Shown piece by piece: positions 26,319-63,285 of a stretch of DNA of 64,000 bases. How positions within the stretch are numbered: position 1 is the stretch's first letter; every line of letters begins with the position of its first letter. The DNA is taken from positions 186,001-250,000 of IMG/VR virus record IMGVR_UViG_3300028800_000001, one strand, 5' to 3'. Made by a program: the position numbers and the translations under genes. The notes beneath the pieces are model-generated. The model was not told the DNA's origin and did not search any database. It saw only the letters and a program-made list of their open reading frames with translations.

Positions 26319-26320
26319 AT

Positions 26321-29259: not shown

Positions 29260-29270
29260 GCAAGAAACAA

Positions 29271-29345
29271 GGGTGACTATCCAGATTTGAACTGGAGTTA
29301 GGAGAGCCACAATCTCCTGTGTTAGACCACTACACTATAGCCACC
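29271..29345 (-). tRNA. tRNA-His(GTG)
   Basis: cloverleaf, TT-GTG-GC loop, G-1. Confidence 0.9.
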
Positions 29346-36754: not shown

Positions 36755-37039
36755 TTAAAGGAGTCCTCCAGCTTGCTTGGCACGCTTAATCAGCTCACGC
36801 ATAAACTCATTACGATTCATGCGTGCACGCTTGCCCTCTGCACGCATTTGCTTTTTGTGATCCACCACCATGCCGTCAAGCGCATCAAGCAACTCGTCAT
36901 CGAGATAGAGCGTGACTTTCTCTTTCAGTTTTACCTTTTTACCGTTCTGCGGTTGTACCGGTATGACATCATTGTCTTGGAACCGCGCCTGCTGCTCTTT
37001 AACAGCTACATCCCAGGCTGACGGCTTGCGTTTGTTCAT
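36755..37039 (-). CDS. ParG-like ribbon-helix-helix partition adaptor
   Basis: KVTLYLDDEL..ALD..MNRNEFMRELI; overlaps parA stop. Confidence 0.7.
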   Translation of the reverse strand: MNKRKPSAWDVAVKEQQARFQDNDVIPVQPQNGKKVKLKEKVTLYLDDELLDALDGMVVDHKKQMRAEGKRARMNRNEFMRELIKRAKQAGGLL

Positions 37040-37806
37040 TGGCGCACCCTTTCTCCCAGACGCACTGAGTCCTGAATAAGCAGTGTTGCCAGATCATCCC
37101 ATAGAACACCAAGAGAAGGATCAATATCAAAGATGTCTGTTTGGAAGCGCACTGCCCTTTTGTAGTCAGTCTTACGTGGCACTGGCGTTTCATAGACGAG
37201 CTTGCCGTATTGTCTGCGAATACTGGTCAGGCAATCCACGTCTTCTTTCTCGCGTGAGCTAAAGAGTGTGGGTAAAATGTACCAGGGATAGAGCTCTTTA
37301 TTGAGCTCAGTGTCATGCACATCTTTGATGTGTCCAAGAATATAAGGAAGGGTGCGGATCGCCATCACTTCACAGGCCACCGGAATGAGGACACTATCAG
37401 CAGCAGTGAGTGCGATACGGGTAAGCACACCAAGCGTCGGTGGACAGTCCAGAATACAATAATCATAATCGGTTGCATATTCGCGCAACCTTCTACGTAA
37501 CGAATGCTCAAAATTGGTTTTCGATGGCAATTCAATTTCGGCTGCGGCCAAGTCCAATGTGGTTGGCAGAAGATGTACAAAACGCCCAAGAGGGAAGGGC
37601 ACAATCTTCACGCCACTGATAATAAGATCATACGTGGTTTCCTTGAGGTCAACGGGCCTCACAAAGTATTCTGTGAGCGAGCTCTGTGGATCAAGATCAA
37701 CCATCAAGACACGCTTGTCCTGACGCGCTAGCGCAGCAGAGAGGCTGACGGTTGATGTGGTCTTCGTCACTCCCCCCTTCTGGTTGGCAATCGCATATAC
37801 CTTCAT
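37036..37806 (-). CDS. parA: ParA/Soj family ATPase
   Basis: NQKGGVTKTT deviant Walker A, DLDPQ, ILDCPP. Confidence 0.93.
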   Translation of the reverse strand: MKVYAIANQKGGVTKTTSTVSLSAALARQDKRVLMVDLDPQSSLTEYFVRPVDLKETTYDLIISGVKIVPFPLGRFVHLLPTTLDLAAAEIELPSKTNFEHSLRRRLREYATDYDYCILDCPPTLGVLTRIALTAADSVLIPVACEVMAIRTLPYILGHIKDVHDTELNKELYPWYILPTLFSSREKEDVDCLTSIRRQYGKLVYETPVPRKTDYKRAVRFQTDIFDIDPSLGVLWDDLATLLIQDSVRLGERVRQ

Positions 37807-37847: not shown

Positions 37848-38717
37848 CTAACTCGCTTTGTAACGGAGCCAAGACTTTACTCTTGGATGTGCTTGATGAT
37901 AACGTTCCAAATCATTGAAAATTTCTTTTTTACGCTCCAAACACACTGTCGATCCGGTATACAAAAATTCAGAGAAAACAAGAAGGTTCTCTCTCCTCCC
38001 TGATAATGGTAAGAAGAATGCGTTTGACTGCTGATTGCGATATATGCACAATGTCTCAATGCCGCGCTCCTCTAATTCTGTTTTCAATCTTTCTAAGAAC
38101 GATTGGCTTCCACCAATGAAACGGCAGATAGTTTCTGTCCAATTACTTCCGCCATTTTTCCTGTGACGTTGATAGACTGTTCCATCGCCATCAAAGTATC
38201 CTCGAATGTATGCCGATAATAAATGCTCAGGAAAATCAGTGGGCCAGGATAGTTGCAACGTCTTGTTTGGAACAATGCCCCAACGAGCAAGAGCCGTTGC
38301 AAGTGGAGGATCATAAAGACACAGTATAGCTGCGCTAGAGCCTCCCTTTCCTCCAAAGCGAATAGCAGATTTTGATCCCACGCCATCTCGAAAATTCTTC
38401 ATATGATCTGCATCAGATTGTTGGAGATGAAGTTGTACTCTTATACTATTCTTCCCGTCCTCATAGATACAACCATCAGCGGCAAGAAAGCCTATCCAAT
38501 AAGCATGCCAATCATCAGAAACATCGAGAAACCCAGACGAGTCTATATAATTTCTCTTAATATAGTGTCCATGCGGATTTTGCTCAATTTCATGCACTTT
38601 CATATGCTTCGATATTGTTGACTCAGCATACCCTGTGGCTCTGGAAATTTCCCTTATGCTCTCCCCGCCAACGGCATATCGCTCGTAAAGAGATTCTTTC
38701 GTAAGCGACTCCCTCAT
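37848..38717 (-). CDS. free-standing LAGLIDADG homing endonuclease with N-terminal HTH
   Basis: YWIGFLAADG and YIRGYFDGDG motifs. Confidence 0.88.
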   Translation of the reverse strand: MRESLTKESLYERYAVGGESIREISRATGYAESTISKHMKVHEIEQNPHGHYIKRNYIDSSGFLDVSDDWHAYWIGFLAADGCIYEDGKNSIRVQLHLQQSDADHMKNFRDGVGSKSAIRFGGKGGSSAAILCLYDPPLATALARWGIVPNKTLQLSWPTDFPEHLLSAYIRGYFDGDGTVYQRHRKNGGSNWTETICRFIGGSQSFLERLKTELEERGIETLCIYRNQQSNAFFLPLSGRRENLLVFSEFLYTGSTVCLERKKEIFNDLERYHQAHPRVKSWLRYKAS

Positions 38718-38852
38718 AATAACCTTGCCGCGCTTGCAGTATCCATTTTCAACAGGCATCATAGTGCCCCTGGTTGGCAATCGCATATACTTTCATACAT
38801 ATTTCCTTTTCATGTAAATTTTACCGTGAAGCGGTTTTACCGTTCTACTGGT

Positions 38853-38881
38853 AGAGTACACAAAAAGGTTCAACCTGTCAA
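38853..38881 (-). promoter_or_regulatory. par operon promoter with downstream TTTTACCGT repeats
   Basis: TTGACA-17-TACTCT; repeats at 38819-38846. Confidence 0.6.
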
Positions 38882-41739
38882 GACTTTTTTCTGAAGGAAC
38901 AAATAAGAAAAAGGTCATACTTTGGCGTAAAAGCAAGGCATCTATGTTATACTGGCGTTACTGTTGGTACAACACCCGACAGATGTGGAAAATAATAGCA
39001 GGGTAGCAACTCATGCGCATCAGCATGTAGTAACTACCCTCTCGTTTTTTACGCTTCTTCTTTGAGCGCTCTCTCACGCGCTGCCTGGGCTTTCGCATTA
39101 TTAGTCAATCGATCTGCATAGCCGTGTACATATTCTTCTACAAAGAGCGCAATAGCCGCGCCATTCTTGCAACATGGTTTTGCCAGCTCCAACGCTGCGC
39201 TGCGCTGCTCTACTTCACTTTGCTCAGGCCGGTCACCAGTAAGATAGGTATAGCCACAACTGTAACCAACATTGCCTGATTCATCGGTGTCATAATACAT
39301 GCGTGTTCTCGCTTTCGTTTTGTGAAACTTTTTCATCTTAAATCTTTTCAACCGCTTCGATGATATACTTGATCGATGCCTGTTCTGCTTCGTGTTTAGA
39401 AACCAGATCAAAGACAAAGGCCAGCAAGATGCCACCTTTCATACGCAGCCCAATCGCCTCTTCATCATCGTTCGGAAAAACCAGAAACCAGAGATCATAC
39501 GAGCTGATAAAGTATGGTCGCTTCTCTGTGACAAGCGTCACACCAAGAAAAGAGCTCCATTCAACGTGCAGTACTGGCAGCATTGGATAGGGATGCTCAA
39601 TATCTTCCACGAAGAAATTATGATTCTCATCTTTTTCAACGTTCAAGCGGAAACTATCTAACTTTCCCTCTGCCGTCCACCAGGATACCTTGAGTAGATT
39701 TTTCACTTGGTACGCTCCTTCCAAACACGTACCAACTCATCATCTTCCAAGAGTGGAGCCAGCATATAGCGAAATGCCAGATTGTCGCCAGTGCGCGAGA
39801 AGCTTTCTAATGAATAGCTGGAAACGCGCATGAGGAGTGTCTCAAATTGACGCACCACACAATCATCCTCCATCATGACATCTGGCTTGCGAAAGAGTGT
39901 CATCGCGTACATCTCTGCATATTTTGCGTAGCGATGCCCAAAGACCTGTTCGCCAATCGTCTCAGGATCGTAGACATTGTCCTCTATCGTGACAATCTCC
40001 GAGCGCTTCACCTCTACGTTCATCAACTCAGCGCCTTGATAGTGCATGTGCTGCAACTCTTTGAGCCAATACTTACTGGTTGCAATACGCGCCATCTCAC
40101 GTGCCAGGGTGCTTCCCAGCTCTGCAAAATCTTTCGTGGCATATTTCATAGTAAGGCTCCCGTGTTTGCGGTATGCCAGAAGTGGCTTTCCTAATTCTTC
40201 GCTCATGAAAATCTTCCTTTTCTTATCGGTTTTCTCACCAACTCTAGAGGACACCAGGGATATTCTGCGTACTCCAGATTAAGGCGAACACTTTCGTACT
40301 TCACATATTCTAAAAACGCTACTTCTTTCTCTTCTGCGGTCGCGTCCTTGCGAAGCACCTGTTTGTACCAGACAGCCTTTTGAATGATCTTGACTACGTC
40401 TTTGATCACTGAGATGCTGTCCCACCAGCCCACACCATCATAATTACGGTACAGCCGTCCAAAGCTGTAGGTGTCCTTCCCCTCCTGTATAATCTGCTCA
40501 GCGATATCCAGAAAGATTGCGCTACCTGTAGTGATTTCTTCGCCATTCACCGTACGATAATACACAAAGTTTGCCATTAACTTCCTCCAATCGTACCGAC
40601 ATACCACGGCGCTTTCGCGTACTCCAAGTCAAGGCGAACATGTTCTAGCTTGACGTAGTCTAAGAAAGCGCTATCCTTATGTTCAAGTGTCTTTGCAGAC
40701 AATAAAAATTGATAAATTAATGCTTTGGTGATCAACTCCAAGACCGAGCGCATATCTTCATACTCATCAAAGTGAAAGGAGAACGCCGCGTCGTCTGCCA
40801 CAATGCTGACAAAGGTATAGCGCTCAGTGCGCTTTTTCTCCGCAATCGCATAGGAAGCTGCACGAAAGAAATCGGGAAAGTTGTTGACGACGGCCTCATG
40901 ATTGAGGACACGTGAATAGGTAAAAATCATGCTGGTAGTTTCCTTACTTGAATATCTGCAAGCGCTGAGAGATACGTAATCATGCCATTCTTTGCTGCGC
41001 CATCTTCTAAAAGCATTGTTTGATAAATCTTATTCTTGAGCGTGTGCTGCGCAAGGTATTTATGACACGCTGGAACATTGCCAAGAAACTGCTCAACCGG
41101 TTCACCTTCTAAAGAGGTGACAGCGATAAGCTGAAAAGAATACTCTTGCTCAGCATGCTTGACAGCCGCAATGACGGCCTCTGGAAAGCTTTGGTACTCT
41201 TCTGTGGTCAACCCTTTTGCACCGCCGTAGCGATTGCGGTAGATGATTTGCGCGTGCTTTACGCCCCGAATACTATCAATTTGAAATGCGGTCACTTCTT
41301 CAAACCCAAGGCATGCCTCTCCCTCATCACCAAACACCGCAAGGATTTCGACATCAATCTCTTTGTCCATTTCACAGGCAGTGCTACACGCTTCGACAAA
41401 GCTCTGACGAGCCATTGTCCGTATAGGAAGCTCAGGGCTGACTCGATAGACGAGACAGGCAGTCATAACTATTCTCCTTATCTTGCGAAGATGTGGCGGA
41501 ATATCACCCCATCCTCCACATCTTCATATTCAAAAATCTCACGGAGCCACTCAAAGGCTTCGCGCATCACCATATACTTTTGCGCTTCGATCTGGTCATC
41601 CAGAAAATCCGCAATGTCGTCCTCACTGGGCAAGACAGGATAATTCTCAAAAAGAAATTCCCACGCGGTTGCAATCGCTGTTTCTTTTGAAGACGAATCT
41701 TCATTATTGCTGCGCTGATTGCAAAACTTGTAAAATGCT

Positions 41740-47960: not shown

Positions 47961-49175
47961 CGTTTTTTCTCCTCTAATTTCTTGTCACGCACACGTGAGT
48001 AGTTCCAGCAGCATCTTTATATTCATGCACCGTGAAAACGCCCTTTGCTTTTTTCCACTCTTCAAAGGTGTACCCTTCTAGAAAGAGTGTTGCAAAAAGC
48101 TCGTTCTTTTCAACCACCCACATATCCCCAGGCTGAAGACGCGTTCGGTCTTCAAGATAGTCTATAAGTGTTCTCATTCTTTTTCTCCTAGAATATCCAA
48201 ATGTAAGTTCTCAGCGATAAGCCGCAAGCAGGCGCGGATATGGCCGCGATCATCAGTGTGATAGGCTTCACGCAACAACGTTTCTGTGCCGTAGTCTTCA
48301 ATATACTGACGTAGCTGCTCTATCTCGACCAGTGTCCGGCCTTTCCCCACAACCTGTACAAAAGCGGCCTCGCCACTCTCGTGATCCTCTATGGCCTTTT
48401 CGCACGCTTCAAGCAAAGAATCAAACCACAATTCTTGGCGATGCCGATAGATATCAAATTGATACTGCACTGATTTTTTATTCATAGCGGTGGTTCCTTT
48501 CTTCTGTTTCGCAGTAACGCTCTGCCGCATCAAGCGTGTCAAAGCGCACTTCGCCATTAAGAAGAATACTGTGAAAAGAGCCAATGCCACGATCTTCGTA
48601 CTCTATAGCTGTCTTGCACGCCTCAAAAAGCGTGTCGCATTCTTTTTCTTGTAAGACGAGAAGACGCCAATAGTTTAAAATTATTTGCTCCATTGTTTCT
48701 TTTCCTCGATAGCCTGCGCGGCCTCTAACATCGTGTGGAATTGTGTGAGGGTGATGCGTCCCAGAAAGCGTGAGGTGGTGTGCCACGCGATCCAGGTGTC
48801 ACCCTCTCGCTCTTGCACAATATAATTCTTCTCGTAGAGGCGAATGCGAAAACCGTCTCTTCCCTCTTCGCCAAACATGGCGTCCAGAAAGTCCATCGTA
48901 AGATCAGTATTTGAGAGCATTCTTTTTCTCCTTATGCGGCCTGTTTGAAACCTTCGATTGCTTGCGCGCCCTGCTCAGGCGTCACATAAAATGCGACCAC
49001 ACGACAATGCCAAAAAGGAGAAACGATAGAACAGGTTTCCCAACGACCAGCCTCAAAATGCTGTGCCACATAACGACCTTTACGCACCTGTAAACGATAG
49101 CCGTCTTTTCCTGTCTCACTCAAAAGCTTTTTCATTTCCATTTCTCCTTGAATTATTTGTTTCTCTAATAAGGTA

Positions 49176-49230
49176 AGTATAGGTCTTTTGCCATAAATCG
49201 TCAAGCATTTTTTCTATGAATATTCAGAAA
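49176..49230 (-). promoter_or_regulatory. sigma70-type promoter with upstream box
   Basis: TTGACG-17-TATACT, TTTCTGAATA. Confidence 0.75.
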
Positions 49231-49279
49231 TTAGAGCAAGTGAGAAAAAGATCATGCGGCACACCAAAGAGAAAATACA

Positions 49280-51170
49280 CGGCTGGAATTAATTACGAAT
49301 AAATAAGAGGGGTGCGCAATGAATTAGAAATTAATTCCGCCGTCTTTTCTCGCGTCCAAGAATTAATTATCATAATTACTCTGGAATTAATTTTAATTAA
49401 CTGAGAGGCTGGAATGAATTAGGGAATTATTTCGTAATTAGAAATTAATTCCAGAGTAATTAAAAAGAATTAGCGCCCCTGTCGAATAATTAAATTTAAT
49501 TACCCCGTAATTAGAAATGAATGAGCAAGTATCCGTGAATTAATTATGGGAATTAAAATTTAATTACGGGGTATCTCCTAATTAGGAGGGGAATTAATTT
49601 TAATTCCAAATTTAATGAGCAGGTATCTTCGAATTAATTAGAGGTTACTCCTAATTAATTTTTTAATTACCAAATAACTCGAAATTAATTAGGAGGTATC
49701 ACTTTATTAAATGATTTAATTAAGGGGGTATCTCAAAGTAATTAGAAGGTATCTGAAATTAATTAGGAGTAACCTCTAATTACTTTTTTAATTAGCAAAG
49801 ACGGCTGGAATTAATTAGGGGTATCCTCTTATTTCTCAAAAGTAATTACGGGGTATCGCTAATTAATTATGGGATATCTCTTAATTACTTCAAGGTATCC
49901 CTCGGAATTAAAAAGTAATTAGCAGGTATCTCTTAATTAACTCCGAGTAATTAGAAGGTATCTCAAATTAATTAGCGGTTACCCGTAATTACTTGAAGGT
50001 ATCACTTAATTAAATCATTTAATTAAGGGGTTATCGCTAATTACTTCAAGGTATCTCAATTAATTAGGAGGTATCTCCAAGTAATTACGAAGTGCCACTC
50101 CAGGGGCTCATAATTACTTTTTTCGTAATTGGCTCAGACCGCTCCACAGGCGTGTTTAGAAATTAGCATATACCTCCAATTAATTAGCGATACCCTCCAT
50201 TACCGTTTTACCGTTCTCTTTTTGAGCTCTATTTTCACCATCAGCAGGGGCATATTTGGCTCGTGGCGGGGGTGAAATTAGAAGAAATAACAGGAGATCT
50301 TTTGAGCTCAGAATTTAATTAGAAGGTATCTGGAAGTAATTACAGGGTATCGCTAATTCCTCAAAATTAATTAGGAGATATATGCTAATTACTTGAAGGT
50401 ATCTCCTAATTCCCAGAAATTAATGAGAGGGTATCCTGAATTAATTATGGGGTATTGCTAATTAATTAGAGGTAACCCGTAATTACTCAAAATTAATTAG
50501 CATATATCTCCGAGTAATTAGAGAGGGGCACTTAATTAAATCATTTAATTAAGGGGTATCCCAAAATTAATTAACAGGTATCTCTCGTAATTAAAAATTA
50601 ATTAGCTGGTATCTTCAATTAATTAGCAATACCTCATAATTAATTGGAGGGGTATCTCCTAATTAAAATTAATTGTTGGAAGTAATTAGCAGATAGGGAT
50701 AATTAATTAAGAGGTCTTCGGAATTAATTAAGAGATACCTGCTAATTACTTTTAATTGTTGGAATGAATTATCCGTAATTAGGAAGTAATTAGAAATAAC
50801 TTTTCATTGCCCATAATTAATTAAGAGATACCTGTTAATTAATTTTTTATTACTGGAGTTAATTAGCGGGGTATCAGCGAATTAAAATTAATTGTCAGAA
50901 TGAATTATCCGGCGTCCGAATGTAATGAGAAGTTATTTCTCATTACCCCCGAATTAATTATGGGATATCTCGTAATTAAATTTCAGTGTCCGGTCTGAAG
51001 AAAGTAATTGCTAATTAATTAAAAAGTAATTCCGAGACCGGCCTGAGTAATAAAAATAATTCTTTCCCACTTTTTCTCAGTATTCCCATAATTCCCAATT
51101 CCCCATAAAAAATTACTTTCCCCTTTCCGCGCCCACGAAGAAAAAGAAAAGTAATTCGTATCCTCCATTA
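49280..51170. repeat. 1.9-kb non-coding AT-rich array of TAATTA-N11/12(GGTATC)-TAATTA pseudo-palindromes (candidate origin/centromere)
   Basis: dozens of TAATTA and GGTATC/GATACC motifs, no ORF >=60 aa over 49204-51019, near the coding-strand switch. Confidence 0.85.
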
Positions 51171-51247
51171 TAGAGAGTTCTTTGTTGCCTCTGCAATTGT
51201 TTTGGCTGCATCCCAGAAAAAAGAGAGGTGCGCCCCATTGATACAAT

Positions 51248-52078
51248 ATGGTACACTATGTTTCTGAAAATCGTCCGTCTTTTCTCGGTAGAAAGGATTG
51301 TCACGTGCCCACTGTTTCGGAGCGCAAGCTGATGCTTGCCCATTACACCTCAGAGATACCACGTCTCGTTCTTGCGACCATTCCAAAGGATGAAAGCTTT
51401 CTCATGATCCCTGTACGCAGAAGAGAAAGAAGTAGCGGCTATGCCCACTGGAAAAATAGACTCAACAAACGTGTCTATTTGCTAGCGGATGGAAAGCACA
51501 CAGAAATTGATTTAGCACGCCTGCTGCATAAATCACTCTTTTCTATTCACCATGCGCTCGGCATGCTGTTCTTTACCCGCTCTATTGATATCGAAATCAA
51601 ACACAAGGAGAATATGATGCCCCTCAACCCTGATCTCCTACGCGCCACACTGGACTACGTTGCGCCACACGAAGAATCCAATCAGTTTCTTAATGCCTAT
51701 TATCACAATCGTAGACAGGCATTCACAGATGTCTTTTATGGCCGTCTGCGGGTAGAATCGCAAGAGGTGGATAATTTATTCTCTGCCAGAGGCACCGATA
51801 TGCGAGAACAAGGAAAGCGGCTCTTTCAAACCCTCTGGTATATTGTTGGTGGTCTGCAAACAAACGATCAAAGCTTGCCACAGAAAATACAGGAGTTAGG
51901 TATGCGCCATCACGGCTACGGCGTCAAACCGTGGATGTACCCAGTGGTCGGAAAAGTCCTCTTGGAGTCTTTTGAAGAATTTCTTGGCCCTGCCTGGACA
52001 CCGCAAATGCAAGAAAGTTGGGCTGCGGCCTACGATCTGGCGTCCAGTGTCATTCTCACTGCCACTGAAGAGCACTAA
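51248..52078 (+). CDS. globin (Vgb/flavohemoglobin-type globin domain) with in-frame N-terminal wHTH-like region
   Basis: FYxRL, LF, Q(E7), LGxRH(F8)xxYGV, YPVVG, W..AY; second RBS before ATG ~51614. Confidence 0.85.
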   Translation: MVHYVSENRPSFLGRKDCHVPTVSERKLMLAHYTSEIPRLVLATIPKDESFLMIPVRRRERSSGYAHWKNRLNKRVYLLADGKHTEIDLARLLHKSLFSIHHALGMLFFTRSIDIEIKHKENMMPLNPDLLRATLDYVAPHEESNQFLNAYYHNRRQAFTDVFYGRLRVESQEVDNLFSARGTDMREQGKRLFQTLWYIVGGLQTNDQSLPQKIQELGMRHHGYGVKPWMYPVVGKVLLESFEEFLGPAWTPQMQESWAAAYDLASSVILTATEEH

Positions 52079-52411: not shown

Positions 52412-52963
52412 TCACAACACACTTTCTTTCTGCAAAGCAGGCGTTATTTCTTCTACACGGGTAAAACACCAGCGAAACCAAAGCGTAGACTCTGCGTCCC
52501 AGGCATTCATATTGCACCTGAGACTATTGTGCAGTAACACATTACCACGTGCGGTTAACTGCAAGCCGTCATAGTCTTGTGCTAAGCGTTCAAAGTCAAA
52601 GCCTGTAAAGGTATAGCTTGCAAACTCACTGAAAACGTCATAGAGGCTTTTGACCCGTTCATCAATCCAACTATAGTCTTTGAGGAGCAAAGCGGCCTCT
52701 GCCTCTCCTCTGATGCAATAGATACGCGCTGTGTGCTTTGGCTCTAAAAGATACCAACGCAGCCCATAGGGATTGCCAAAGTCCTCTTTTTTGCACCAGG
52801 ACACCCAGGCTGAATCCTGTGTGCTTTCTCTATACGTGGAAGTCCACAGCCCTGTATTAAATTGTGGTTTCTTGAGGTAGCTCGCGCTCCCCTCATTTTT
52901 GACCGGCGTCACCACTGGCCGTAGTGGCTCCAATGACCGGCTCAGATGTAATTGTGTTTTCAT
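52412..52963 (-). CDS. phage protein, possible ART fold
   Basis: KP..GLWTS...DFERLAQDYDG...WDAES pattern. Confidence 0.4.
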   Translation of the reverse strand: MKTQLHLSRSLEPLRPVVTPVKNEGSASYLKKPQFNTGLWTSTYRESTQDSAWVSWCKKEDFGNPYGLRWYLLEPKHTARIYCIRGEAEAALLLKDYSWIDERVKSLYDVFSEFASYTFTGFDFERLAQDYDGLQLTARGNVLLHNSLRCNMNAWDAESTLWFRWCFTRVEEITPALQKESVL

Positions 52964-54014: not shown

Positions 54015-54224
54015 ATGTTGGAAGAAGAACAAAAACTTGAACGCGTTTTTACGCAAAGAGAAGCGGCAAGAATATTGAATGTGGTTGAACGCACTATACG
54101 TCGTAGAATTGACGCTGGAGACCTCGAAGCCTACAAAGAGGGGAACCAGTGGCGTATCACTGAGACTTCGCTCCTTCAATACCAGCAAAAGCAAAGAAAG
54201 AAATATGGCAGTAGAGCCGCGTAA
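54015..54224 (+). CDS. excisionase-like HTH DNA-binding protein
   Basis: TQREAARILNV..RTIRRRI..GDLEAYKEGNQWRI. Confidence 0.85.
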   Translation: MLEEEQKLERVFTQREAARILNVVERTIRRRIDAGDLEAYKEGNQWRITETSLLQYQQKQRKKYGSRAA

Positions 54225-54499: not shown

Positions 54500-55951
54500 A
54501 TGGCAAAAAGTAAGTGGTCTAACGCTCAAACAAAGATAACACACGAAGTTAACGAGAAATCGTTACAAAGATATTATGAGTACCGCGCTCAGCAGGTAAC
54601 ACTCGCTGAACAGCAAAGAGAGCAAATTGAGAGTATCAGTAAGATACTTCGCACACGCCCTGACTTTCGTATGGGGATTTCATTCTTAGCAGGAGAACCA
54701 CGCATGCTCGATGATAAAACCAAAGAGCGGTTCTGGCCGCATTACCATATCTGCGCAATACGTGGTGTCGATCCTGTTCATAATCCTTCCTGGCCCTGGC
54801 TCCTAGAATTTAAAGAGAAGATTGTTCACAGGCTGGAGATGAAGAATGAATGGAGTTTTAAATATCGACAGAGTCGCATTATCGAATGCGACGGCATTAC
54901 GCAAACCATGCGCAAGGCATTTGCGCTACAGCAAGGGAAGAAACGCATTTACATGCACAATTTTCTTACCTATAACGAGCGAAAAGCTAGAGAAGCGGAT
55001 ATTGTTGTATGCAAAGAACTGGCAAAAGCCACAAGCGCATATCCACAGCTCGACTTCATGCGCAAATATCTTCATGGCATCCCTTTTACAACTTTTCTCA
55101 ACTTTAAACGAGTGAATAGCGAAAAGACGCTGGAGCTCGCAAAAATGATTGACGATGACGGCGAACAGCAAAGGATTGTGCAAACCATGATTGATGAAGT
55201 AAAGCCACACTATCCAGTATCGCTAAAGAATAATCCCATACTGGCAAGAATTTACACGCCAAATTTCGGCAATGTTATGTCAATCCTGAGAAGAGCATAC
55301 TTCGCTGGATGCCTTGAAGCTGACTTTCAAAACTTCCATTTTGCACTCATGGTTTCTTATTATCCAAATATCATGCGAGAAACCGCCGCTTGGCTTTCAA
55401 AAGGCGAATCGATCTGGAAAGAAATCATGAAAACCATGAAGATTGCTCCTAATTTGCGAGGAACGGCCAAAGGAATAATCAAACCACGTGTTTATTCAAT
55501 CGAATACGGATTTGATCCCTTAAAAGCACAAGAGCTTCTTCATAACGATCTCAAAAAAGCACGCATCCCAAGGAAAGCCGATCTTTTCAATTGCGTTTAC
55601 GTAGACGAGCTTGCCAGAGCAACACAACAATGCCTTTTAGATATAAGAGATAAAAAAGAGTTAGCAGGCCCATACGGAACAAAACAATGGGATACAACAA
55701 CAAAAGAAGAAAGCTTCCTTGCTAACGTTTTTCAGTCATGGGAAATAGCAGTACGTTTCCCCTGCTACGAATTTGCTTCAAAACAAAAAGCCCAGTGCAA
55801 CAGCATTTTTGATATTGTGCTTGATCAGCACGACGGCTTCACTGTACTCCCAGAGAAAGGAAAACAAGAAGAAACAAAACAGCAATTATTAAAAATCGCA
55901 AACAAAACACTTTCAGATTACAAAATTAATAGCAGTTTAATTTTTAAATAA
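54500..55951 (+). CDS. family A polymerase-like protein (palm/fingers only; candidate replication protein)
   Basis: ARIY, motif A LEADFQNFH, motif B RxxAKxxxKxxxYxxxYG, motif C QHDG. Confidence 0.6.
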   Translation: MAKSKWSNAQTKITHEVNEKSLQRYYEYRAQQVTLAEQQREQIESISKILRTRPDFRMGISFLAGEPRMLDDKTKERFWPHYHICAIRGVDPVHNPSWPWLLEFKEKIVHRLEMKNEWSFKYRQSRIIECDGITQTMRKAFALQQGKKRIYMHNFLTYNERKAREADIVVCKELAKATSAYPQLDFMRKYLHGIPFTTFLNFKRVNSEKTLELAKMIDDDGEQQRIVQTMIDEVKPHYPVSLKNNPILARIYTPNFGNVMSILRRAYFAGCLEADFQNFHFALMVSYYPNIMRETAAWLSKGESIWKEIMKTMKIAPNLRGTAKGIIKPRVYSIEYGFDPLKAQELLHNDLKKARIPRKADLFNCVYVDELARATQQCLLDIRDKKELAGPYGTKQWDTTTKEESFLANVFQSWEIAVRFPCYEFASKQKAQCNSIFDIVLDQHDGFTVLPEKGKQEETKQQLLKIANKTLSDYKINSSLIFK

Positions 55952-56861: not shown

Positions 56862-56911
56862 TAATTTACTTACGTATAACATTTTTCAAAAAAGAAAGGA
56901 ATTTGATACAT

Positions 56912-58447
56912 ATGTTTGAAGTAGTTACACAGGCTGAGGCCGCAAGATTGATCGGAACAACTTCTGCTGTCATCCAAAATCTTATCGCAAAAGGAGTTGT
57001 TCAAGCCAATCGGCAAGGTAAAACGGTGCTCATTCACATCTCAGAGTTGAAAAAATTACTTACAACAACGCATTTAACGTTTGAACAACGCCAAAATCTT
57101 GAACGAGCGCTTACCGAGAATGATAAAGAGACGGAAATAAGAGACGATGATCAAGATGAGTATATAGAATCAGCGAAAAGCATTTATGAGCAGAGAGCCG
57201 TCACAGAACCGCTTGACCCAAACGTTGGAAGTTTGTACCAGAAATGGATGAGTGGAGATCTAATTCTCGATCCAGATTTTCAGCGTGAATTTGTTTGGGA
57301 GCGCCCCAAAGCTAGCCTTTTCATTGATTCGCTTGCGATTGGAATACCAACGCCAACAGTATATATATCAGAAGAGGCAGATGGAAAATGGATTGTTGTT
57401 GATGGTAAGCAACGTTTGAAATCCACTTTTGATTATATCAGCAAGCGCTGGGGTTACGATGGCACGATCTTTCGTTTGTCGAAGGATTTGGAAAATTTAA
57501 AGCTTGCTGGTCGCAGTTTTGATCAGTTAGATGGTGTGACGCAGCGCGGTATTATGAATGCCTCCATACCTGTTACTATTATACGTGAGCCATTTCGTCC
57601 CAAAATAAAATGGGAGATTTTCATACGTATTAATGGAAAGCCAACCTCATTGAATCATCAGCAATTGCGAAACGCAATTTATTATGGCCCGTTCCTCTCT
57701 TTTACACGAGAGCTTGCACAAAATACGACATTGCGAAGGTTGGTGCATCCTAGCCGCAAGACGAAAGAAGCTGAATATCAGGAGCATGTTCTGCGCTTCT
57801 TCGCATTTGATAATACTGATATACCCAATTTCAGAGGCTCGCTTAACACGCTGCTTGACGCTACAGCAGATCGATTCCAACATCGCAGCGAAAAAACATT
57901 CTTGCCGATGAAGGCGAGGTTTCTTTTAGCGTTGGAACGCAGCGAAGTATTATTCGGTGATAAAAGCTTCGTGCGCCTCAATCCAGGGAAGAGACTGGTT
58001 GATCCAAATGGTTATTGGTCAAAAAATTCTACCAATAAATATCTTTATGATCTACTAACCTGGGGGCTGATACGCATCGATGCGCAAGACTTCGAACTGC
58101 ACCAAGATTCACTGCGTGAAGGATTTTTGCACTTCTTTGCTACGAATCAGCGAATGCAGGTGCATATTAATAGCGGCTTGAGCAGTGGGCAAAACAAGGC
58201 AGTCAAAGAGCGTTTTGAACTCTTTGATACTTTTTTACAGAAGCTTTTGGCAGAGTTGCACGAAGTCGAAGAACCGTTTACATACGATTGGAAGTGGCAG
58301 CACTTTCATATAACCGATTTGTGTACTGTTTGTAAGAAACCTATACAAGAACGTGATGATGCGGCGGTATACGGCATCAAAAATTATTGGACAGAGCAAC
58401 CGGTAGGTGAAGTATCGTTTGCTCATCGTTGTTGCGTGGATTATTAA
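56912..58447 (+). CDS. HTH + DUF262 (GmrSD N-terminal, ParB/Srx-like) + C-terminal Cys/His domain
   Basis: TQAEAARLI HTH; PDFQREFVW, VVDGKQRL, FIRIN; CxxC...HxxC tail. Confidence 0.8.
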   Translation: MFEVVTQAEAARLIGTTSAVIQNLIAKGVVQANRQGKTVLIHISELKKLLTTTHLTFEQRQNLERALTENDKETEIRDDDQDEYIESAKSIYEQRAVTEPLDPNVGSLYQKWMSGDLILDPDFQREFVWERPKASLFIDSLAIGIPTPTVYISEEADGKWIVVDGKQRLKSTFDYISKRWGYDGTIFRLSKDLENLKLAGRSFDQLDGVTQRGIMNASIPVTIIREPFRPKIKWEIFIRINGKPTSLNHQQLRNAIYYGPFLSFTRELAQNTTLRRLVHPSRKTKEAEYQEHVLRFFAFDNTDIPNFRGSLNTLLDATADRFQHRSEKTFLPMKARFLLALERSEVLFGDKSFVRLNPGKRLVDPNGYWSKNSTNKYLYDLLTWGLIRIDAQDFELHQDSLREGFLHFFATNQRMQVHINSGLSSGQNKAVKERFELFDTFLQKLLAELHEVEEPFTYDWKWQHFHITDLCTVCKKPIQERDDAAVYGIKNYWTEQPVGEVSFAHRCCVDY

Positions 58448-58994: not shown

Positions 58995-59603
58995 ATGCGA
59001 CCGGTGAACAAAACCACTTCCAAAGAAAAGCCACGTAAAAGCGCTGAGGAGCTTGAGGCGCTGGTCGATTCTTTGGCTGAAGAGTTGGACGATCATAGTG
59101 AGGCAACCCGCGCTGCGCTCTTCTCCTTCGTGCTGCATGCAGGTTACAAAGCACCAGTGCTTATGCTCGGTGTTATTAACCTCACTCTTAGAGTGCATGG
59201 AGGAATGGCGATTGAAGCAGGGGTGAAGCTGACCAGCAAAGCTGATTGTTTTTATTATCTTTTGAAGCGTGACTTTCCAGCCATTTATGAAAATGTCATG
59301 CGAGGTGGAGCGAAAAAAGCCAATGATGCGCAAGACCTGATCTTTCAGGATGACGTGACATGGTTTGAAGAGCATCCAGAGAGCATTCAGCTTATGCGTA
59401 GCAAAACACCAGTTGAAGATTTCCCAACGAACTGTGTGATCATTGCGCAGCTTGCGCCGCGCCGCCATGCGATTGTGCCTACGCCTGTAAAAGAGCAGGG
59501 AAAAGCGTGGGACGCCTTAAAGAGTGGCACACGGTTGGATGTCTCAGACATTGATCTGAGTGAAGTCCTACCAGGGAAGGAAGATTTACCTGGACTATTG
59601 TAG
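58995..59603 (+). CDS. hypothetical protein
   Basis: 202-aa ORF. Confidence 0.6.
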   Translation: MRPVNKTTSKEKPRKSAEELEALVDSLAEELDDHSEATRAALFSFVLHAGYKAPVLMLGVINLTLRVHGGMAIEAGVKLTSKADCFYYLLKRDFPAIYENVMRGGAKKANDAQDLIFQDDVTWFEEHPESIQLMRSKTPVEDFPTNCVIIAQLAPRRHAIVPTPVKEQGKAWDALKSGTRLDVSDIDLSEVLPGKEDLPGLL

Positions 59604-59748
59604 AATAATAAGAGAAAGTTTGATGCTTTCTCTTATTATTCTCCTCCTAGAATTCTTCTTTGCTTTCTCCCCAATTAAATTTTCTTTTCAAAAAATAAAA
59701 AATGAGAATCTTTTTGTCTTTTTTCTAAAAATTGGAGGCACTTCTTTT

Positions 59749-60903
59749 ATGTACGATACAATTTCTTTGTTTAGCGGAGCAATGGGGTTAGATCTTGGCC
59801 TTGAAAGCATAGGTTTCAGAACACGTATTTGTGTTGAGATCAATGCACACTGTTATCGAACGATCCAGCAAAATCGGCCTTATCTTCCAGTCATTTTCCG
59901 AAATATACAAGAGGTCACAACGCAAGAAGTTTTGGAAGCAGCGGGGCTCAAAAGCGAGGAAGTTTTCCTCATCTGTGGTGGGCCTCCTTGTCAGCCATTT
60001 AGTACAGCCGGAAAGCGAAAATCGACAGAAGATCCCAGAGGAAATCTTTTTAAAGATTTTATACGCTTCGTTGAAGAAATCAGGCCATCATATTTCTTAA
60101 TGGAAAACGTAAGAGGGATATTATCTGCTGCAATAAAACATAGACCGCTTGATAAAAGAGGGAAAACAAACTTGCCGCTTGAGGATGATGAGACGTTGGG
60201 CTCTGTACTAGAAATTATTCTCGATGAATTTCAAAGAATTGGCTATACAGTAACCTATAAGCTTGTAAATGCAGCAAATTATGGCGTTCCACAATCAAGA
60301 GAAAGAGTTCTGTTTTTAGGAAGTAAAGACGGGCAGAAGATTCCCTTTCCGCCAGAGACACATGCAAAGAAACCTTCGGGTGGAATGCTTCCTTGGATGA
60401 CATTAGGAGAAGCTTTTGAAGGGTTAGAAGATTCCTTTCCTCAGTATCAGTCTTATAGCGAAACTAGAGCAAAGTTGTTTGATATGATATTGCCAGGGAA
60501 AAATTGGAGATCGCTCCCGCAAGATGTTCAATCAGAGGCTCTAGGTGGGGCATACAATTCAACAGGAGGAAGAGTGGGTTTCTATAGAAGATTGTCATTT
60601 GATAAGCCATCTCCAACGATAATTACAAGTATGATACAAAAAGCCAGTGGTATGTGTCACCCAGTTGAAACGCGCCCGTTGAGTGTACTCGAATGTAAAA
60701 CCTTACAGCAGTTCCCTGTTGACTGGCAGATCTCAGGCAATTTATTGGAACAATATCGCCAAATTGGCAATGCAGTTCCGATAGGACTAGGTAAAGTTAT
60801 GGGGGAAGCAATTCTTCGTGCCGAGAAGGAAAAAGAGGAATGTGTTGGTTCACCCATAGAAAAGCTTGACATTGCGTTACTACAACTCCAAAGTGTATTG
60901 TAA
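59749..60903 (+). CDS. DNA (cytosine-5)-methyltransferase
   Basis: SLFSGAMG, GGPPCQPFS, MENV, PQSRERV, IGNAVP; GGAGG RBS. Confidence 0.95.
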   Translation: MYDTISLFSGAMGLDLGLESIGFRTRICVEINAHCYRTIQQNRPYLPVIFRNIQEVTTQEVLEAAGLKSEEVFLICGGPPCQPFSTAGKRKSTEDPRGNLFKDFIRFVEEIRPSYFLMENVRGILSAAIKHRPLDKRGKTNLPLEDDETLGSVLEIILDEFQRIGYTVTYKLVNAANYGVPQSRERVLFLGSKDGQKIPFPPETHAKKPSGGMLPWMTLGEAFEGLEDSFPQYQSYSETRAKLFDMILPGKNWRSLPQDVQSEALGGAYNSTGGRVGFYRRLSFDKPSPTIITSMIQKASGMCHPVETRPLSVLECKTLQQFPVDWQISGNLLEQYRQIGNAVPIGLGKVMGEAILRAEKEKEECVGSPIEKLDIALLQLQSVL

Positions 60904-61486: not shown

Positions 61487-61716
61487 TTTTCAGGAGGCGG
61501 GTACAAAGAGGGTGACACTACATTGGCTGTTCCTTTCACACAGTACACGGTTGCTCTTGTGTTTGTCAACAGGGAAGCAGTATACTTTTTTGATAAATTG
61601 CCAGATTGCTCGTCTTTTTTCTTATAAAAGCGCTGTACTGGTGGAATATAGTAAATGTGCAGGGATGTTTTTTCTGGAATATTCACGTGCAAAGAAAAGC
61701 GAAAAGGATGGAACAT

Positions 61717-63285
61717 ATGTTAGAAATTGTGACACAGGCAGAGGCCGCACGACTGATGAATACATCATCGGCAGCGATCAAGCATCTCATTGACAATGGA
61801 TACCTTGCAGGAGAAAAACAGGGAAAGAGTGTATTAATTAAATTAGAAGCACTCAAGACCTTGCTAGGGAGTCAAGCCTTGAACGACATTCAGCGCAAAG
61901 CACTGGAAAATGCCTTTCCTGATGCGGCTGCTTCCAAGAAGTATGCAAACTTTGTGCCCACATGGCAGCAAGCAGTGCCAGAGGCATCACCGCTACCAGA
62001 GCAAGCAAAGATCACCATCAGGCAAGAAAATGCCAAAGTAAAAACCGTGGAGGAAGGTGTTGCAACCCTCTGGCAGCAGTTTCTTGATGGTGATCTTATT
62101 CTTGATCCTGATTTCCAGCGAGAATTTGTGTGGGATCGCAAAAAGAGCAGTCTTTTTATTGATTCGCTTGTTTCTGGTTATCCCACACAATCACTCTACT
62201 TTTCTCGTGAGGCTGACAACCGGCGCATTGTGATTGATGGACGCCAGCGGCTCACAGCACTCTTCAACTACCTGAGTAAGGTGTGGAGTCCAGATGGCTC
62301 TGTCTTCCGTCTCTCACGTGATCTGGATGACAGTAGGTTGCGTGGACGTGCTTTTGATCAATTGGACGGCGTCACAGCGCGTGCCATTATGGGCGCATCA
62401 CTTGCGGTCTCAACGGTAGATGAGCCACTACGACCAGATATTAAGCGTATCATCTTTATGCGGCTCAATGATAAGCCAACGCCACTTGACCCACAGCAAT
62501 TCCGCAATGCCTTGTACTATGGGCCATTTATGCACTTTGTGCGTGATCTGACCAAATTTGAGAAGTTTCGTGAACTGGCACATCCTAGTCGTAAAACCAA
62601 AGAGTCACAATATCAGGAGATGATCTTGCGCTTCCTGGCACTGGACACGCATGATGTCAATTCGTTTCGTGGCTCACTGCGTGACCTCTTAGATGCCACT
62701 TGCCAAACCTATCAACATGAGAAGCAACAGGAGATTTATGATACCATGCGTGGCCGCTTTCAAGAGGCTGTCTTGCGCAATGAAGTGCTCTTTGGTGATC
62801 AGACCTTCACGCGCTTCAATCTGGGAAAGCGGCTGGTCAATCCCAATGGATTTTGGACAAGCAAATTTATTAACAAAAACATTTATGAACTCATGATGTG
62901 GGGCGTCTTGCGTATTCAGGAAGAAGAGTTTTTGCTGTACCGTGACTCTCTTCGAGAGAGCATACTGCATTTCTTTGCCACCAATCAAATGATCAAAATC
63001 CACCTGGAGGGTGGACACAGCAATGGTAAGAATGCAGCCGTCAAGGAACGCTTTGCTTTGTTTCAGGCACGCCTGAACGCCACACTACAACAGATGCGTG
63101 AGGTGAATGAACCATTTACGTATGAGTGGAAATGGAGCCAGTTTCATTTGACAGATCGTTGTGCTGTCTGCGACAAGCCAATCTTGGAGCGTGACGATTC
63201 AGCCGTCTATGAGCACAGTGATTACTGGGCAGAACGTCCAAAAGAAAAAGTGAACTTTGCGCACCGCTGTTGTGTCAACTACTAA
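61717..63285 (+). CDS. HTH + DUF262 + Cys/His tail, paralog of 56912-58447
   Basis: PDFQREFVW, VIDGRQRL, HPSRKTKE, FAHRCCV shared with paralog. Confidence 0.8.
   Translation: MLEIVTQAEAARLMNTSSAAIKHLIDNGYLAGEKQGKSVLIKLEALKTLLGSQALNDIQRKALENAFPDAAASKKYANFVPTWQQAVPEASPLPEQAKITIRQENAKVKTVEEGVATLWQQFLDGDLILDPDFQREFVWDRKKSSLFIDSLVSGYPTQSLYFSREADNRRIVIDGRQRLTALFNYLSKVWSPDGSVFRLSRDLDDSRLRGRAFDQLDGVTARAIMGASLAVSTVDEPLRPDIKRIIFMRLNDKPTPLDPQQFRNALYYGPFMHFVRDLTKFEKFRELAHPSRKTKESQYQEMILRFLALDTHDVNSFRGSLRDLLDATCQTYQHEKQQEIYDTMRGRFQEAVLRNEVLFGDQTFTRFNLGKRLVNPNGFWTSKFINKNIYELMMWGVLRIQEEEFLLYRDSLRESILHFFATNQMIKIHLEGGHSNGKNAAVKERFALFQARLNATLQQMREVNEPFTYEWKWSQFHLTDRCAVCDKPILERDDSAVYEHSDYWAERPKEKVNFAHRCCVNY

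What the first reader, a model, noticed from the sequence alone, without database searches (positions are those of the whole stretch)
49280..51170. 1.9-kb array of TAATTA-GGTATC-TAATTA pseudo-palindromes near the strand switch
Seen: the unit is typically TAATTA + 11-12 nt containing GGTATC + TAATTA, in both orientations. Longer copies include a 30-bp inverted pair (49911-49940 / 50724-50753), a 26-bp inverted pair (49635-49660 / 49757-49782) and a 28-bp direct pair (50003 / 50530). A less repetitive core lies at ~50090-50310. It is neither CRISPR nor a simple tandem repeat. Inference: a large protein-loading platform (replication origin, centromere, or packaging/terminal region).
Basis: partly seen in the sequence, partly recalled or inferred. 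Interest (0 to 1): 0.7.

Follow-up and report, generated by a model that had tools for sequence, protein, structure and literature searches.

The report
Helically phased repeat platform, probable phage origin
A 2-kb gene-free stretch of a 327-kb soil phage carries about 25 GGTATC boxes flanked by TAATTA, all on one face of the DNA helix. It is most likely the landing pad where proteins assemble to start, or to segregate, copies of the phage genome.

Summary
TAATTA-N11/12-TAATTA occurs 17 times in the window against 0.01 expected, always inside 49.5-51.0 kb. The array holds 71 of the genome's 160 TAATTA.

The new finding is strict helical phasing. The 25 GGTATC/GATACC boxes give Rayleigh R = 0.86 at a period of 10.50 bp over 1.3 kb. 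A natural 52-bp (five-turn) insertion variant keeps that phase.

Eight independent rhizosphere assemblies reproduce all or part of the array. A related phage contig (L031) has an AT-rich GATACC array at the same place.

The host genome is a circular 327-kb phage assembly. The array lies between divergent outward promoters at the head of a 237-kb leftward gene block, about 4-5 kb from the global GC-skew minimum. A strand-bias component that is independent of coding strand switches at 240-243 kb.

The genome also encodes a ParA plus ribbon-helix-helix (RHH) partition pair. The operator-like 12-mer of that pair recurs in the array's core.

Best reading: an iteron-like replication-origin platform (0.42). 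The main rival is a partition centromere (0.25). A packaging site is not supported. No binding protein was identified.

The parts
49136..51304 (.). Whole non-coding interval that holds the array. It runs from the probable ATG of the first leftward gene to the GTG of the rightward HTH-globin gene.
   Evidence: ORF list. The RBS and ATG were read. The called 257-aa product starts at 51305. GC is 0.32 over the 1.8-kb gap, the lowest among the genome's gaps longer than 400 bp.
49176..49204 (-). Outward sigma-70-type promoter (TTGACG-17-TATACT) for the 237-kb leftward gene block. It belongs to a family of 11 leftward promoters that share GAAAAAANNCTTGAC.
   Evidence: Promoter scan, 10 of 12 matches. 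Family count of 11, all on the - strand, including this one and the parA promoter.
49290..50090 (+). Left repeat half: 36 TAATTA and 13 GGTATC boxes, all in + orientation, GC 0.30.
   Evidence: TAATTA phase coherence R = 0.69 at 10.42 bp, p < 0.0005.
50091..50310 (.). Less repetitive core: GC 0.44, 2 TAATTA and one reversed box (50189).
   Evidence: No RNA family match and no excess folding energy on either strand.
50200..50219 (-). Tandem ACGGTAAA-ACGGTAAT site in the core. It shares the 13-mer AGAACGGTAAAAC with the parA promoter and is a probable binding site of the RHH partition protein.
   Evidence: The 12-mer AGAACGGTAAAA occurs 3 times in the genome against 0.05 expected. All three are on the - strand: at the parA promoter, inside the RHH gene, and here.
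50311..51030 (+). Right repeat half: 33 TAATTA, 9 GGTATC (+) and 2 GATACC. Polarity flips from about 50700 to the right.
   Evidence: TAATTA phase coherence R = 0.56 at 10.44 bp, p = 0.002 or less.
50400..50448 (+). Unit that is duplicated (49 bp plus CCC, 52 bp in all, five helical turns) in a natural variant found in two metagenomes.
   Evidence: The 'goes back 49' joints with CCC between, in contigs of X2 and X5.
50718..50851 (-). Inverted segment, a mirror copy of 49906-49990. It carries the gene-proximal GATACC-oriented boxes.
   Evidence: Inverted pairs I1 and I15. The boxes have the same orientation as those next to the homologous gene in L031.
51120..51304 (+). Non-coding stretch conserved with L031. 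It holds an extended -10 promoter (TGGTACACT) for the HTH-globin gene.
   Evidence: Alignment with L031 shows blocks GCGCCCAC..AGAAAAAGAAAAG, GGAGGTGC and TATGGTACA.T..GTTTCTGAAAA. That the conserved TGGTACACT is a promoter is read from the sequence and is an inference.
51305..52078 (+). Winged-HTH (PATAN/DUF742-like) domain fused to a globin. It is the first rightward gene and is syntenic with the array in L031.
   Evidence: Pfam Globin E = 4.8e-11. 49% identity to the L031 orthologue. The N-terminal fold resembles PATAN/DUF742 at TM about 0.55.
52412..52963 (-). 183-aa protein conserved with L031 (53% identity). Its family sits in replication and early modules of smaller phages. The fold is weakly ADP-ribosyltransferase/RES-like.
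54015..54224 (+). 69-aa HTH_17 (excisionase/MerR-type) protein, a candidate array binder.
   Evidence: Pfam HTH_17 E = 1.5e-13. An HTH_17 gene precedes the polymerase-like gene in L031 too.
54500..55951 (+). Minimal family-A DNA-polymerase-like protein with no exonuclease domain.
   Evidence: Structure look-alikes are Pol I at TM about 0.5. The family has 145 HMMER relatives. Invariant D285, K338, Y342, G347 and H-D455-G. A profile of the family hits Taq Pol I at E = 0.002.
36755..37806 (-). Type Ib partition pair: ParA (256 aa) and a translationally coupled RHH protein (94 aa).
   Evidence: AAA_31 E = 5e-46 and CbiA E = 1.6e-17. RHH_1 E = 9e-4, just under the Pfam cut-off.
38800..38885 (-). 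parA promoter (TTGACA-17-TACTCT) followed by AGAACGGTAAAAC..ACGGTAAAA operator-like repeats.
   Evidence: Sequence read; motif counts.

Best explanation
The array is a cis-acting nucleoprotein platform at or next to the replication origin of a circular, bidirectionally replicating 327-kb phage with plasmid-like features.

Shown:
- About 25 GGTATC boxes, each preceded by TAATTA at a fixed 3-nt distance and usually followed by a second TAATTA, lie at integral multiples of 10.5 bp. All boxes therefore face one side of the helix over 1.3 kb.
- Natural variants keep the motif and the phase.
- The region is the most AT-rich of the genome's gaps longer than 400 bp. It lies between outward promoters about 4-5 kb from the global GC-skew minimum.

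Inferred:
- A sequence-specific phage protein, not yet identified, binds the boxes cooperatively, like initiators on 21-22-bp iterons.
- It forms a one-sided coat or filament that strains or opens the AT-rich DNA, so that the phage replisome (Pol III alpha-type DnaE, possibly helped by the neighbouring family-A polymerase-like enzyme) can load.
- The ParG-like RHH protein docks at its own site in the central core. This would link origin and partition, as origin-proximal centromeres do in plasmids and chromosomes.
For: - Enrichment and anatomy.
- Phasing: pairwise TAATTA distances peak at 21, 31, 52, 73, 84, 105 and 126 bp. GGTATC boxes give R = 0.86 at 10.50 bp, and 23 of 24 successive gaps are within about 1 bp of a multiple of 10.45 bp, p < 0.0005.
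- Polymorphism: a 52-bp insertion occurs in X2 and X5. SNP 50031 T>G, seen in 7 of 8 metagenomes, creates an in-phase canonical box.
- Conservation: L031 has a 29%-GC array with (A/G)AGATACC boxes at 20-21 and 32-bp gaps directly upstream of the orthologous HTH-globin gene. Its contig breaks inside the array.
- Genome frame: the assembly is circular, with a 127-bp end overlap. The cumulative GC-skew minimum falls in the 235-240 kb bin.
- Skew model: regressing skew on coding strand plus a two-arm step lowers RSS from 1.716 to 1.209. The best switches are at 240-243 kb and 27-42 kb; the array is at 235.3-237.2 kb.
- Terminus side: a tyrosine recombinase lies at about 40 kb, near the second switch.
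- Neighbours: a family-A polymerase-like gene and an HTH_17 gene lie 3-5 kb away, and the pair is conserved in L031.
- Background: about 30% of huge phages show bidirectional-type skew (PMC7162821). That iterons are typically spaced 21-22 bp is from my own knowledge of iteron plasmids and lambda ori.
Against: - No Rep_3 or DnaA-type initiator was found in the genome, and DnaB_C gave nothing. No flanking protein has a recognised initiator fold.
- The best-fit skew switch is 3-6 kb to the right of the array, not on it. Most genes on the left arm share one strand, so transcription and replication effects are only partly separable.
- At 1.9 kb and roughly 60 sites, the array is several times larger than any characterised iteron origin.
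- The main replicase gene (DnaE) lies 100 kb away.
- Read-depth data that could show an origin peak were not available; only contigs were served.
- A partition-protein-like site in the core fits a centromere equally well.
Confidence: 0.42

Rival explanations
1. Partition centromere of the phage's type Ib ParA-RHH system. The RHH protein, alone or with a partner, coats the box and AT-spacer array on one face, and ParA moves the complex. This would be an oversized version of the TP228 parH site.
For: - ParA (256 aa) and a coupled 94-aa RHH protein with a long N-terminal tail lie 11.5 kb away.
- Only two 9-bp repeats lie at their own promoter, so no large centromere is present there.
- The 12-mer AGAACGGTAAAA occurs only at the parA promoter, in the RHH gene and in the array core, against 0.05 expected.
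[quoted passage not shown] This array has the same grammar.
- The main box and the operator-like repeat share GGTA.
- Centromeres commonly lie near origins (my own knowledge).
Against: - The abundant box (GGTATC with TAATTA) is absent from the parA promoter, and the operator-like repeat occurs only once (as a tandem) in the array.
- The array is not adjacent to the par operon.
- The period is 21 bp, against 8 bp in parH.
- The array is about 20 times longer than parH.
- The RHH assignment is just below the Pfam cut-off.
- About 2.4 chance 13-mer matches to the 262-bp promoter region are expected genome-wide.
Confidence: 0.25
2. Regulatory or architectural region. It would be an operator field or silencer-nucleation site that controls the two outward promoters, for example an early/late or lysogeny-type switch. 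The binder could be the neighbouring HTH-globin, the HTH_17 protein or a host nucleoid protein.
For: - The array sits exactly between divergent sigma-70-type promoters.
- The adjacent gene encodes a wHTH-globin fusion, conserved with the array in L031. This suggests a signal-responsive regulator.
- TA-step-rich, phased AT DNA is a typical target of nucleoid-associated proteins (my own knowledge).
Against: - Roughly 60 sites over 1.9 kb is far more than any known operator region.
- The PATAN/DUF742-like wHTH is not an established DNA-binding domain, and its model was poor (pLDDT 49).
- This reading does not explain the nearness to the skew switch or the par-operator-like site.
Confidence: 0.15
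3. Packaging (pac) or terminal region where small terminase oligomers wrap phased DNA.
For: Phased, bendable repeats are known at some pac sites, such as SPP1 and P1 (my own knowledge).
Against: - TerL lies 24 kb away, at genome 260.5-262.1 kb.
- Contigs from independent samples run through the array, and no pile-up of ends or loose ends was seen there.
- The assembly closes into a circle elsewhere.
- Only contigs, not raw reads, were available, so physical termini could not be tested properly.
Confidence: 0.04
4. Functionless expanding repeat or assembly artefact.
For: AT-rich repeats can expand by slippage, and assemblies often break in them. X1, X3 and X4 are fragmented here.
Against: - The same sequence is recovered in eight metagenomes, once in a single spanning contig.
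- Phase is kept over 1.3 kb.
- Box polarity is strong.
- The box is conserved in a phage whose flanking proteins are only 32-53% identical.
Confidence: 0.03

Closest known systems
Iteron-type theta origins (phage lambda ori with four 18-19-bp pseudo-palindromic O-protein sites; plasmids P1 oriR, F, R6K, pPS10 with 19-22-bp iterons at about two-turn spacing)
   Same: Units are about 20-bp pseudo-palindromes in mostly direct orientation, spaced at 21 bp or further whole helical turns. The setting is AT-rich. The array lies near a GC-skew switch and between outward promoters.
   Different: The array has roughly 60 sites over 1.9 kb, against 4-14 sites over 0.1-0.6 kb. No adjacent or overlapping Rep or O-type initiator gene was recognised. 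The array flanks a 220-bp non-repeat core, and no discrete unwinding element is evident.
parH centromere of plasmid TP228 (ParF-ParG, type Ib; PMC3130281) and related RHH-bound centromeres (pSM19035 omega sites)
   Same: Short specific boxes alternate with AT-rich spacers, which suits cooperative coating. A Walker-type ParA and an RHH protein with a flexible N-terminal tail are encoded in the same genome. The operator-like sequence of the par promoter recurs in the array core.
   Different: The array is 11.5 kb from the par genes. The dominant box differs from the operator-like repeat. The period is 21 bp rather than 7-8 bp, and the array is about 20 times longer.
EBV oriP (family of repeats plus dyad symmetry element)
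   Same: A large array of about 20-bp palindromic sites for one protein is combined with a distinct central or adjacent element. Replication and segregation functions sit in one cis region.
   Different: It belongs to a eukaryotic virus, has an unrelated sequence and protein (EBNA1), and has 30-bp tandem units. This is an analogy only, taken from my own knowledge.
ParR-parC (R1, pSK41) and TubR-tubC partition complexes
   Same: Helically phased iterons let many dimers polymerise into a continuous protein-DNA superstructure.
   Different: No tubulin-like gene was found, and ParM was not searched for. Those arrays are 100-200 bp long and adjacent to their genes.

Membership tests
Iteron-type replication origin | Multiple copies of a 17-22-bp initiator site spaced by whole helical turns | tested here: met
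   The base period is 21 bp. Gaps are multiples of about 10.5 bp. R = 0.86 at 10.50 bp for 25 boxes.
Iteron-type replication origin | Cognate initiator (Rep/O/DnaA-type) gene adjacent to or overlapping the iterons | tested here: not met
   Rep3_N and Bac_DnaA gave no match in the genome. Flanking ORFs gave no initiator family in Pfam or PHROGs. Novel initiators cannot be excluded. Phage_rep_O was not searched for in this genome.
Iteron-type replication origin | AT-rich unwinding element next to the iterons | tested here: inconclusive
   The whole array has GC 0.30-0.31, with 60-bp windows of 78-82% AT. No distinct DUE-like repeat could be singled out.
Iteron-type replication origin | Coincides with the leading/lagging strand-bias switch | tested here: inconclusive
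   The global cumulative-skew minimum falls in the 235-240 kb bin. The coding-corrected best switch is at 240-243 kb, 3-6 kb right of the array.
Iteron-type replication origin | Supports autonomous replication; coverage peak in replicating populations | not testable with these tools
   Only assembler contigs of the metagenomes were served, and no raw reads.
Type Ib partition centromere (ParA + RHH) | Walker-type ParA and RHH centromere-binding protein encoded by the replicon | tested here: met
   ParA at 37036-37806, AAA_31 E = 5e-46. RHH at 36755-37039, RHH_1 E = 9e-4, 19.5 bits against a 20.5-bit cut-off.
Type Ib partition centromere (ParA + RHH) | Array of the same short boxes that the RHH protein binds at its own promoter | tested here: inconclusive
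   The operator-like AGAACGGTAAAA is shared by the parA promoter and the array core. The abundant GGTATC/TAATTA unit is absent from the promoter. The two share only GGTA.
Type Ib partition centromere (ParA + RHH) | Centromere directly flanks the par operon | tested here: not met
   The array lies 11.5 kb from parA, with about 20 ORFs between them.
CRISPR array | Near-identical 25-40-bp repeats separated by unique spacers of similar length | tested here: not met
   Units are degenerate (60-87% identity), overlap through TAATTAATTA and have no unique spacers.
pac/cos packaging site | Next to the terminase genes; molecule ends map there | tested here: not met
   TerL lies 24 kb away. No ends or loose ends were seen in the array, and contigs span it. 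Physical ends could not be tested without raw reads.
Structured non-coding RNA gene | Rfam match or folding energy beyond shuffles | tested here: not met
   No relevant Rfam hit in 47-56 kb. Core z-scores are -0.81 and +0.88. No RNA runs were listed.

The most novel reading that the evidence does not exclude
The array is a new class of replicon-maintenance element for plasmid-like jumbo phages. It would be a 'super-iteron' field in which about 60 sites, kept on one helical face over more than 120 turns, template a continuous one-sided protein filament made by an unrecognised initiator. A ParG-like partition protein docks in a central core. A single 2-kb cis element would then serve as both origin and centromere.
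Probability: 0.2. Interest if true: 0.75.

Novelty: new variant of a known kind. Interest (0 to 1): 0.6.

Why it matters
Replication origins and inheritance mechanisms of uncultivated huge phages are almost wholly unknown and are usually inferred from GC skew alone. This locus gives a concrete, testable cis element with a defined motif, a strict structural rule (whole-turn spacing, obeyed even by natural indels) and a short list of candidate binding proteins. If confirmed, three things would follow:
- It would show how a 327-kb phage replicon is initiated, segregated, or both.
- It would extend iteron and centromere architecture to a much larger scale.
- It would give a marker motif grammar for finding origins in other metagenomic phages.

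A ParA-RHH pair and a tyrosine recombinase near the opposite skew switch also suggest that this jumbo phage may persist as a plasmid-like replicon.

Tried and rejected
**Relatives**
- Phage isolates: no similarity to 47.0-54.5 kb.
- The exact unit pattern in IMG/VR gave only 8 single chance-level hits. The L031-type double box gave none.
- Searches through flanking proteins in viral, metagenome and genome contigs returned nothing or only the genome itself. Alignment A4 was too divergent to scan with. Relatives cannot be drawn for a virus record.
- Word-based protein searches for the polymerase-like protein and the HTH-globin found only self.
- More distant polymerase-like loci (L032, L035, L036, and the P0002 contig, for which only the gene table was available) show no comparable array. 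The link holds only for the close relative L031.
- Contexts of the 183-aa family are replication or early modules of 40-60-kb phages, without arrays.

**RNA**
- No Rfam family matched, the core does not fold beyond shuffles, and no RNA runs were listed.

**Binding proteins**
- The AF2 model of the HTH-globin was too poor to use (pLDDT 49).
- The 183-aa protein folded well, but it resembles ADP-ribosyltransferase/RES toxins only weakly and is not a DNA binder.
- No protein-DNA complex prediction was run. It gives no verdict for DNA and would not distinguish sequence specificity.

**Other checks**
- The 13-mer link to the parA promoter was first over-read. About 2.4 chance 13-mer matches are expected genome-wide, and the other matches turned out to be a shared promoter element. 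The link was kept only because the 12-mer occurs 3 times against 0.05 expected and is tandem at each site.
- Reading the units as T7-like promoters for the polymerase-like protein was considered and set aside. The family's motifs are Pol I-like, and no transcripts or genes follow the units.
- No tubulin/TubZ, DnaB_C, Rep_3 or DnaA family member was found in the genome.
Full report
**Setting.** The window is bases 186001-250000 of a 327,295-bp IMG/VR virus record. Its two ends overlap by 127 bp, so the assembly is circular. It is a tailed jumbo phage from rhizosphere metagenomes. Its genes include:
- a portal with an intein, a Ro60/TROVE protein and 11 tRNAs;
- a prohead protease, a tape-measure protein, a Pol III alpha-type DnaE and a Ser/Thr kinase;
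- TerL.

**Observation.** The flagged stretch is as described.
- No ORF of 50 aa or more lies in 49205-51018.
- GC falls to 0.30-0.31 in the two repeat halves, against 0.47 around them.
- TAATTA-N11/12-TAATTA occurs 17 times in the window against 0.01 expected. TAATTANNNGGTATC with up to 1 mismatch occurs 23 times against 0.2 expected. All but one of these matches lie in the array.
- The array holds 71 of the genome's 160 TAATTA.
- A perfect 21-bp palindrome, TTAATTAAATCATTTAATTAA, occurs twice, with a third one-mismatch copy.
- The core, 50091-50310, has GC 0.44 and almost no repeats.
- Contigs from eight metagenomes cover all or part of the array at 99% identity or more. One 9.4-kb contig spans all of it, so it is not an assembly artefact.

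**Anatomy.** Aligning on GGTATC gives an asymmetric unit: AAWTAATTA, three bases, GGTATC, TC, then a second TAATTA two or three bases further on.
- The box is polar: 22 copies on the + strand and 3 on the - strand (50189, 50734, 50827).
- Units are often chained at 21 bp through overlapping TAATTAATTA.
- Pairwise TAATTA distances peak at 21, 31, 52, 73, 84, 105 and 126 bp.
- The 25 boxes give a Rayleigh R of 0.86 at a period of 10.50 bp. Of the 24 successive gaps, 23 are within about 1 bp of a multiple of 10.45 bp. The one exception is the reversed box in the core. No random, jittered or gap-permuted control reached the observed values.
- All boxes therefore face one side of the helix over about 1.3 kb. 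A period equal to the solution helical repeat fits a protein coat or filament along one face. The tight nucleosome-like wrapping that gives shorter periods fits less well; this last point is an inference from my own knowledge.

**Population variation obeys the same rule.**
- Two metagenomes carry a 52-bp insertion, a duplicate of 50400-50448 plus CCC, which equals five helical turns.
- At 50031, seven of eight metagenomes have G where the reference has T. This turns GGTTATC into a canonical GGTATC that is in phase with its neighbours.

**Conservation.** Only one relative with synteny was found: L031, a 7-kb Logan contig.
- It encodes orthologues of the HTH-globin (49% identity), the 183-aa protein (53%), an HTH_17 protein and the polymerase-like protein (32%), in the same order.
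- Upstream of its HTH-globin gene lies a 29%-GC region with seven exact GATACC/GGTATC boxes. Local gaps are 20-21 and 32 bp. The contig ends inside this region.
- The box and part of its flank are conserved: TTGAAGGTATCT occurs in both phages. The TAATTA elements are replaced by A-tracts.
- The gene-proximal boxes have the same orientation in both phages.
- About 180 bp between the array and the gene is also conserved.
- More distant relatives of the polymerase-like protein have no such array.

**Genomic frame.**
- A simple gene call puts nearly all genes from 0 to 237 kb on the - strand and mixed blocks to the right.
- The array lies at the head of the leftward block. Its left edge carries a TTGACG-17-TATACT promoter, one of 11 leftward promoters that share GAAAAAANNCTTGAC. 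Its right side carries a conserved extended -10 promoter for the HTH-globin gene (the promoter reading is an inference).
- The cumulative GC skew has its global minimum in the 235-240 kb bin.
- Regressing 1-kb skew on coding strand alone gives RSS 1.716. Adding a two-arm step gives 1.209, with best switches at 240-243 kb and 27-42 kb. So there is a strand bias beyond coding orientation. It flips 3-6 kb to the right of the array.
- A tyrosine recombinase lies at about 40 kb, beside an AT-rich gap near the second switch.
- This pattern is that of a bidirectionally replicating circle, as reported for about 30% of huge phages (PMC7162821).

**Link to partition.**
- A ParA (256 aa) and a translationally coupled 94-aa ribbon-helix-helix (RHH) protein lie 11.5 kb to the left.
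- Their promoter is followed by AGAACGGTAAAAC..ACGGTAAAA.
- The 12-mer AGAACGGTAAAA occurs three times in the genome against 0.05 expected: at that promoter, inside the RHH gene, and as a tandem at 50200-50219 in the array core. All three are on the - strand.
- By analogy with type Ib systems, in which the RHH protein binds both its operator and the centromere (PMC3130281), this is probably an RHH site. That is an inference.
- A caution: chance 13-mer matches to the promoter region are not rare genome-wide.

**Candidate binders.** None could be assigned.
- The N-terminal domain of the HTH-globin resembles PATAN/DUF742 winged helices, but the model was poor.
- The 183-aa protein folds well but is weakly ADP-ribosyltransferase-like.
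- The 493-aa protein is a minimal family-A DNA-polymerase-like enzyme with Pol I-type motifs.
- No Rep_3, DnaA, DnaB_C or tubulin family member was found.

**Interpretation.** The platform reading is strongly supported. I rank the possible functions as follows.

| Reading | Confidence | Main grounds |
|---|---|---|
| Iteron-like replication origin | 0.42 | 21-bp whole-turn spacing, AT richness, nearness to the skew switch, polymerase-like neighbour |
| Centromere for the ParA-RHH pair | 0.25 | Par genes present, par-like site in the core, parH-like box and spacer grammar |
| Regulatory field for the divergent promoters | 0.15 | Position between outward promoters, conserved wHTH-globin neighbour |
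| Packaging site | 0.04 | Phased repeats only; TerL is 24 kb away and no molecule ends were seen |
| Junk or artefact | 0.03 | Contradicted by eight independent assemblies, preserved phase, polarity and conservation |

The remaining probability allows for functions not considered. Origin and centromere may coexist in this one element. The array is several times larger than any characterised iteron origin or plasmid centromere, and no known initiator is present. I therefore file it as a new variant of a known kind, not as a member of a specific family.

Noticed in passing
genome 321.2-323.7 kb (L020:11200-13700) and genome 18.6-20.1 kb: A second, unrelated non-coding array: 31 plus 10 copies of gTTTCAA-N8-GTRYGARY, all on the + strand, at a 34-36-bp period. 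It has no Rfam match. One cluster lies close to the cumulative-skew maximum. Its function is unknown.
   Followed up: partly
window 37848-38786 (-) and 38770-38800: A LAGLIDADG homing-endonuclease gene is inserted into the 5' end of parA. The first nine parA codons (MKVYAIANQ) are duplicated, so the original promoter now reads into the endonuclease ORF.
   Followed up: partly
window 51305-52078 (+); L031:807-1658 and 1686-2141: A phage-encoded globin (the proximal-His region looks like bacterial Hmp/VHb globins by eye) is fused to a PATAN/DUF742-like winged-helix domain. L031 has a second stand-alone globin. It may be a gas- or redox-sensing regulator.
   Followed up: partly
window 54015-54224 and 54500-55951 (+): A conserved gene pair: an HTH_17 protein and a roughly 480-aa family-A DNA-polymerase-like protein without an exonuclease domain. 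Motifs are D285, K338, Y342, G347 and HDG. The family has 145 HMMER relatives and no Pfam family.
   Followed up: partly
window 52412-52963 (-): A 183-aa family with a confident AF2 model (pLDDT 94) and a weak ADP-ribosyltransferase/RES-toxin-like fold. It recurs in early or replication modules of 40-60-kb phages, next to DnaB, IstB-like and Rep_O genes.
   Followed up: yes
window 56903-58447 and 61606-63285 (+); 59560-60903 (+): Two paralogous HTH_17-DUF262 (GmrSD N-terminal, ParB/Srx-like) proteins flank a C5 cytosine methyltransferase. They could be defence or anti-defence proteins, or ParB-like DNA clamps.
   Followed up: no
window 13486-16368 (-), 16750-18648 (-), 20435-29344: The portal gene carries an intein and a Mu F-like domain. 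A Ro60/TROVE protein with a vWA domain lies beside it. A cluster of 11 tRNA genes follows.
   Followed up: no
genome about 39.6-41.2 kb (L041): A tyrosine recombinase (377-aa frame) lies beside a 560-bp gap of 36% GC, inside the interval where the coding-corrected skew model places the second switch. It could be a dimer-resolution or attachment site.
   Followed up: no
11 sites on the - strand, e.g. window 38877 and 49200: A family of leftward promoters shares GAAAAAANNCTTGAC upstream of a sigma-70-type -10 element. None occurs on the + strand.
   Followed up: partly
genome 177.7-179.1 kb (L029:17696-19123, -): A 475-aa protein with a ParB N-terminal domain (E = 3.7e-6) lies far from both ParA and the array.
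   Followed up: no
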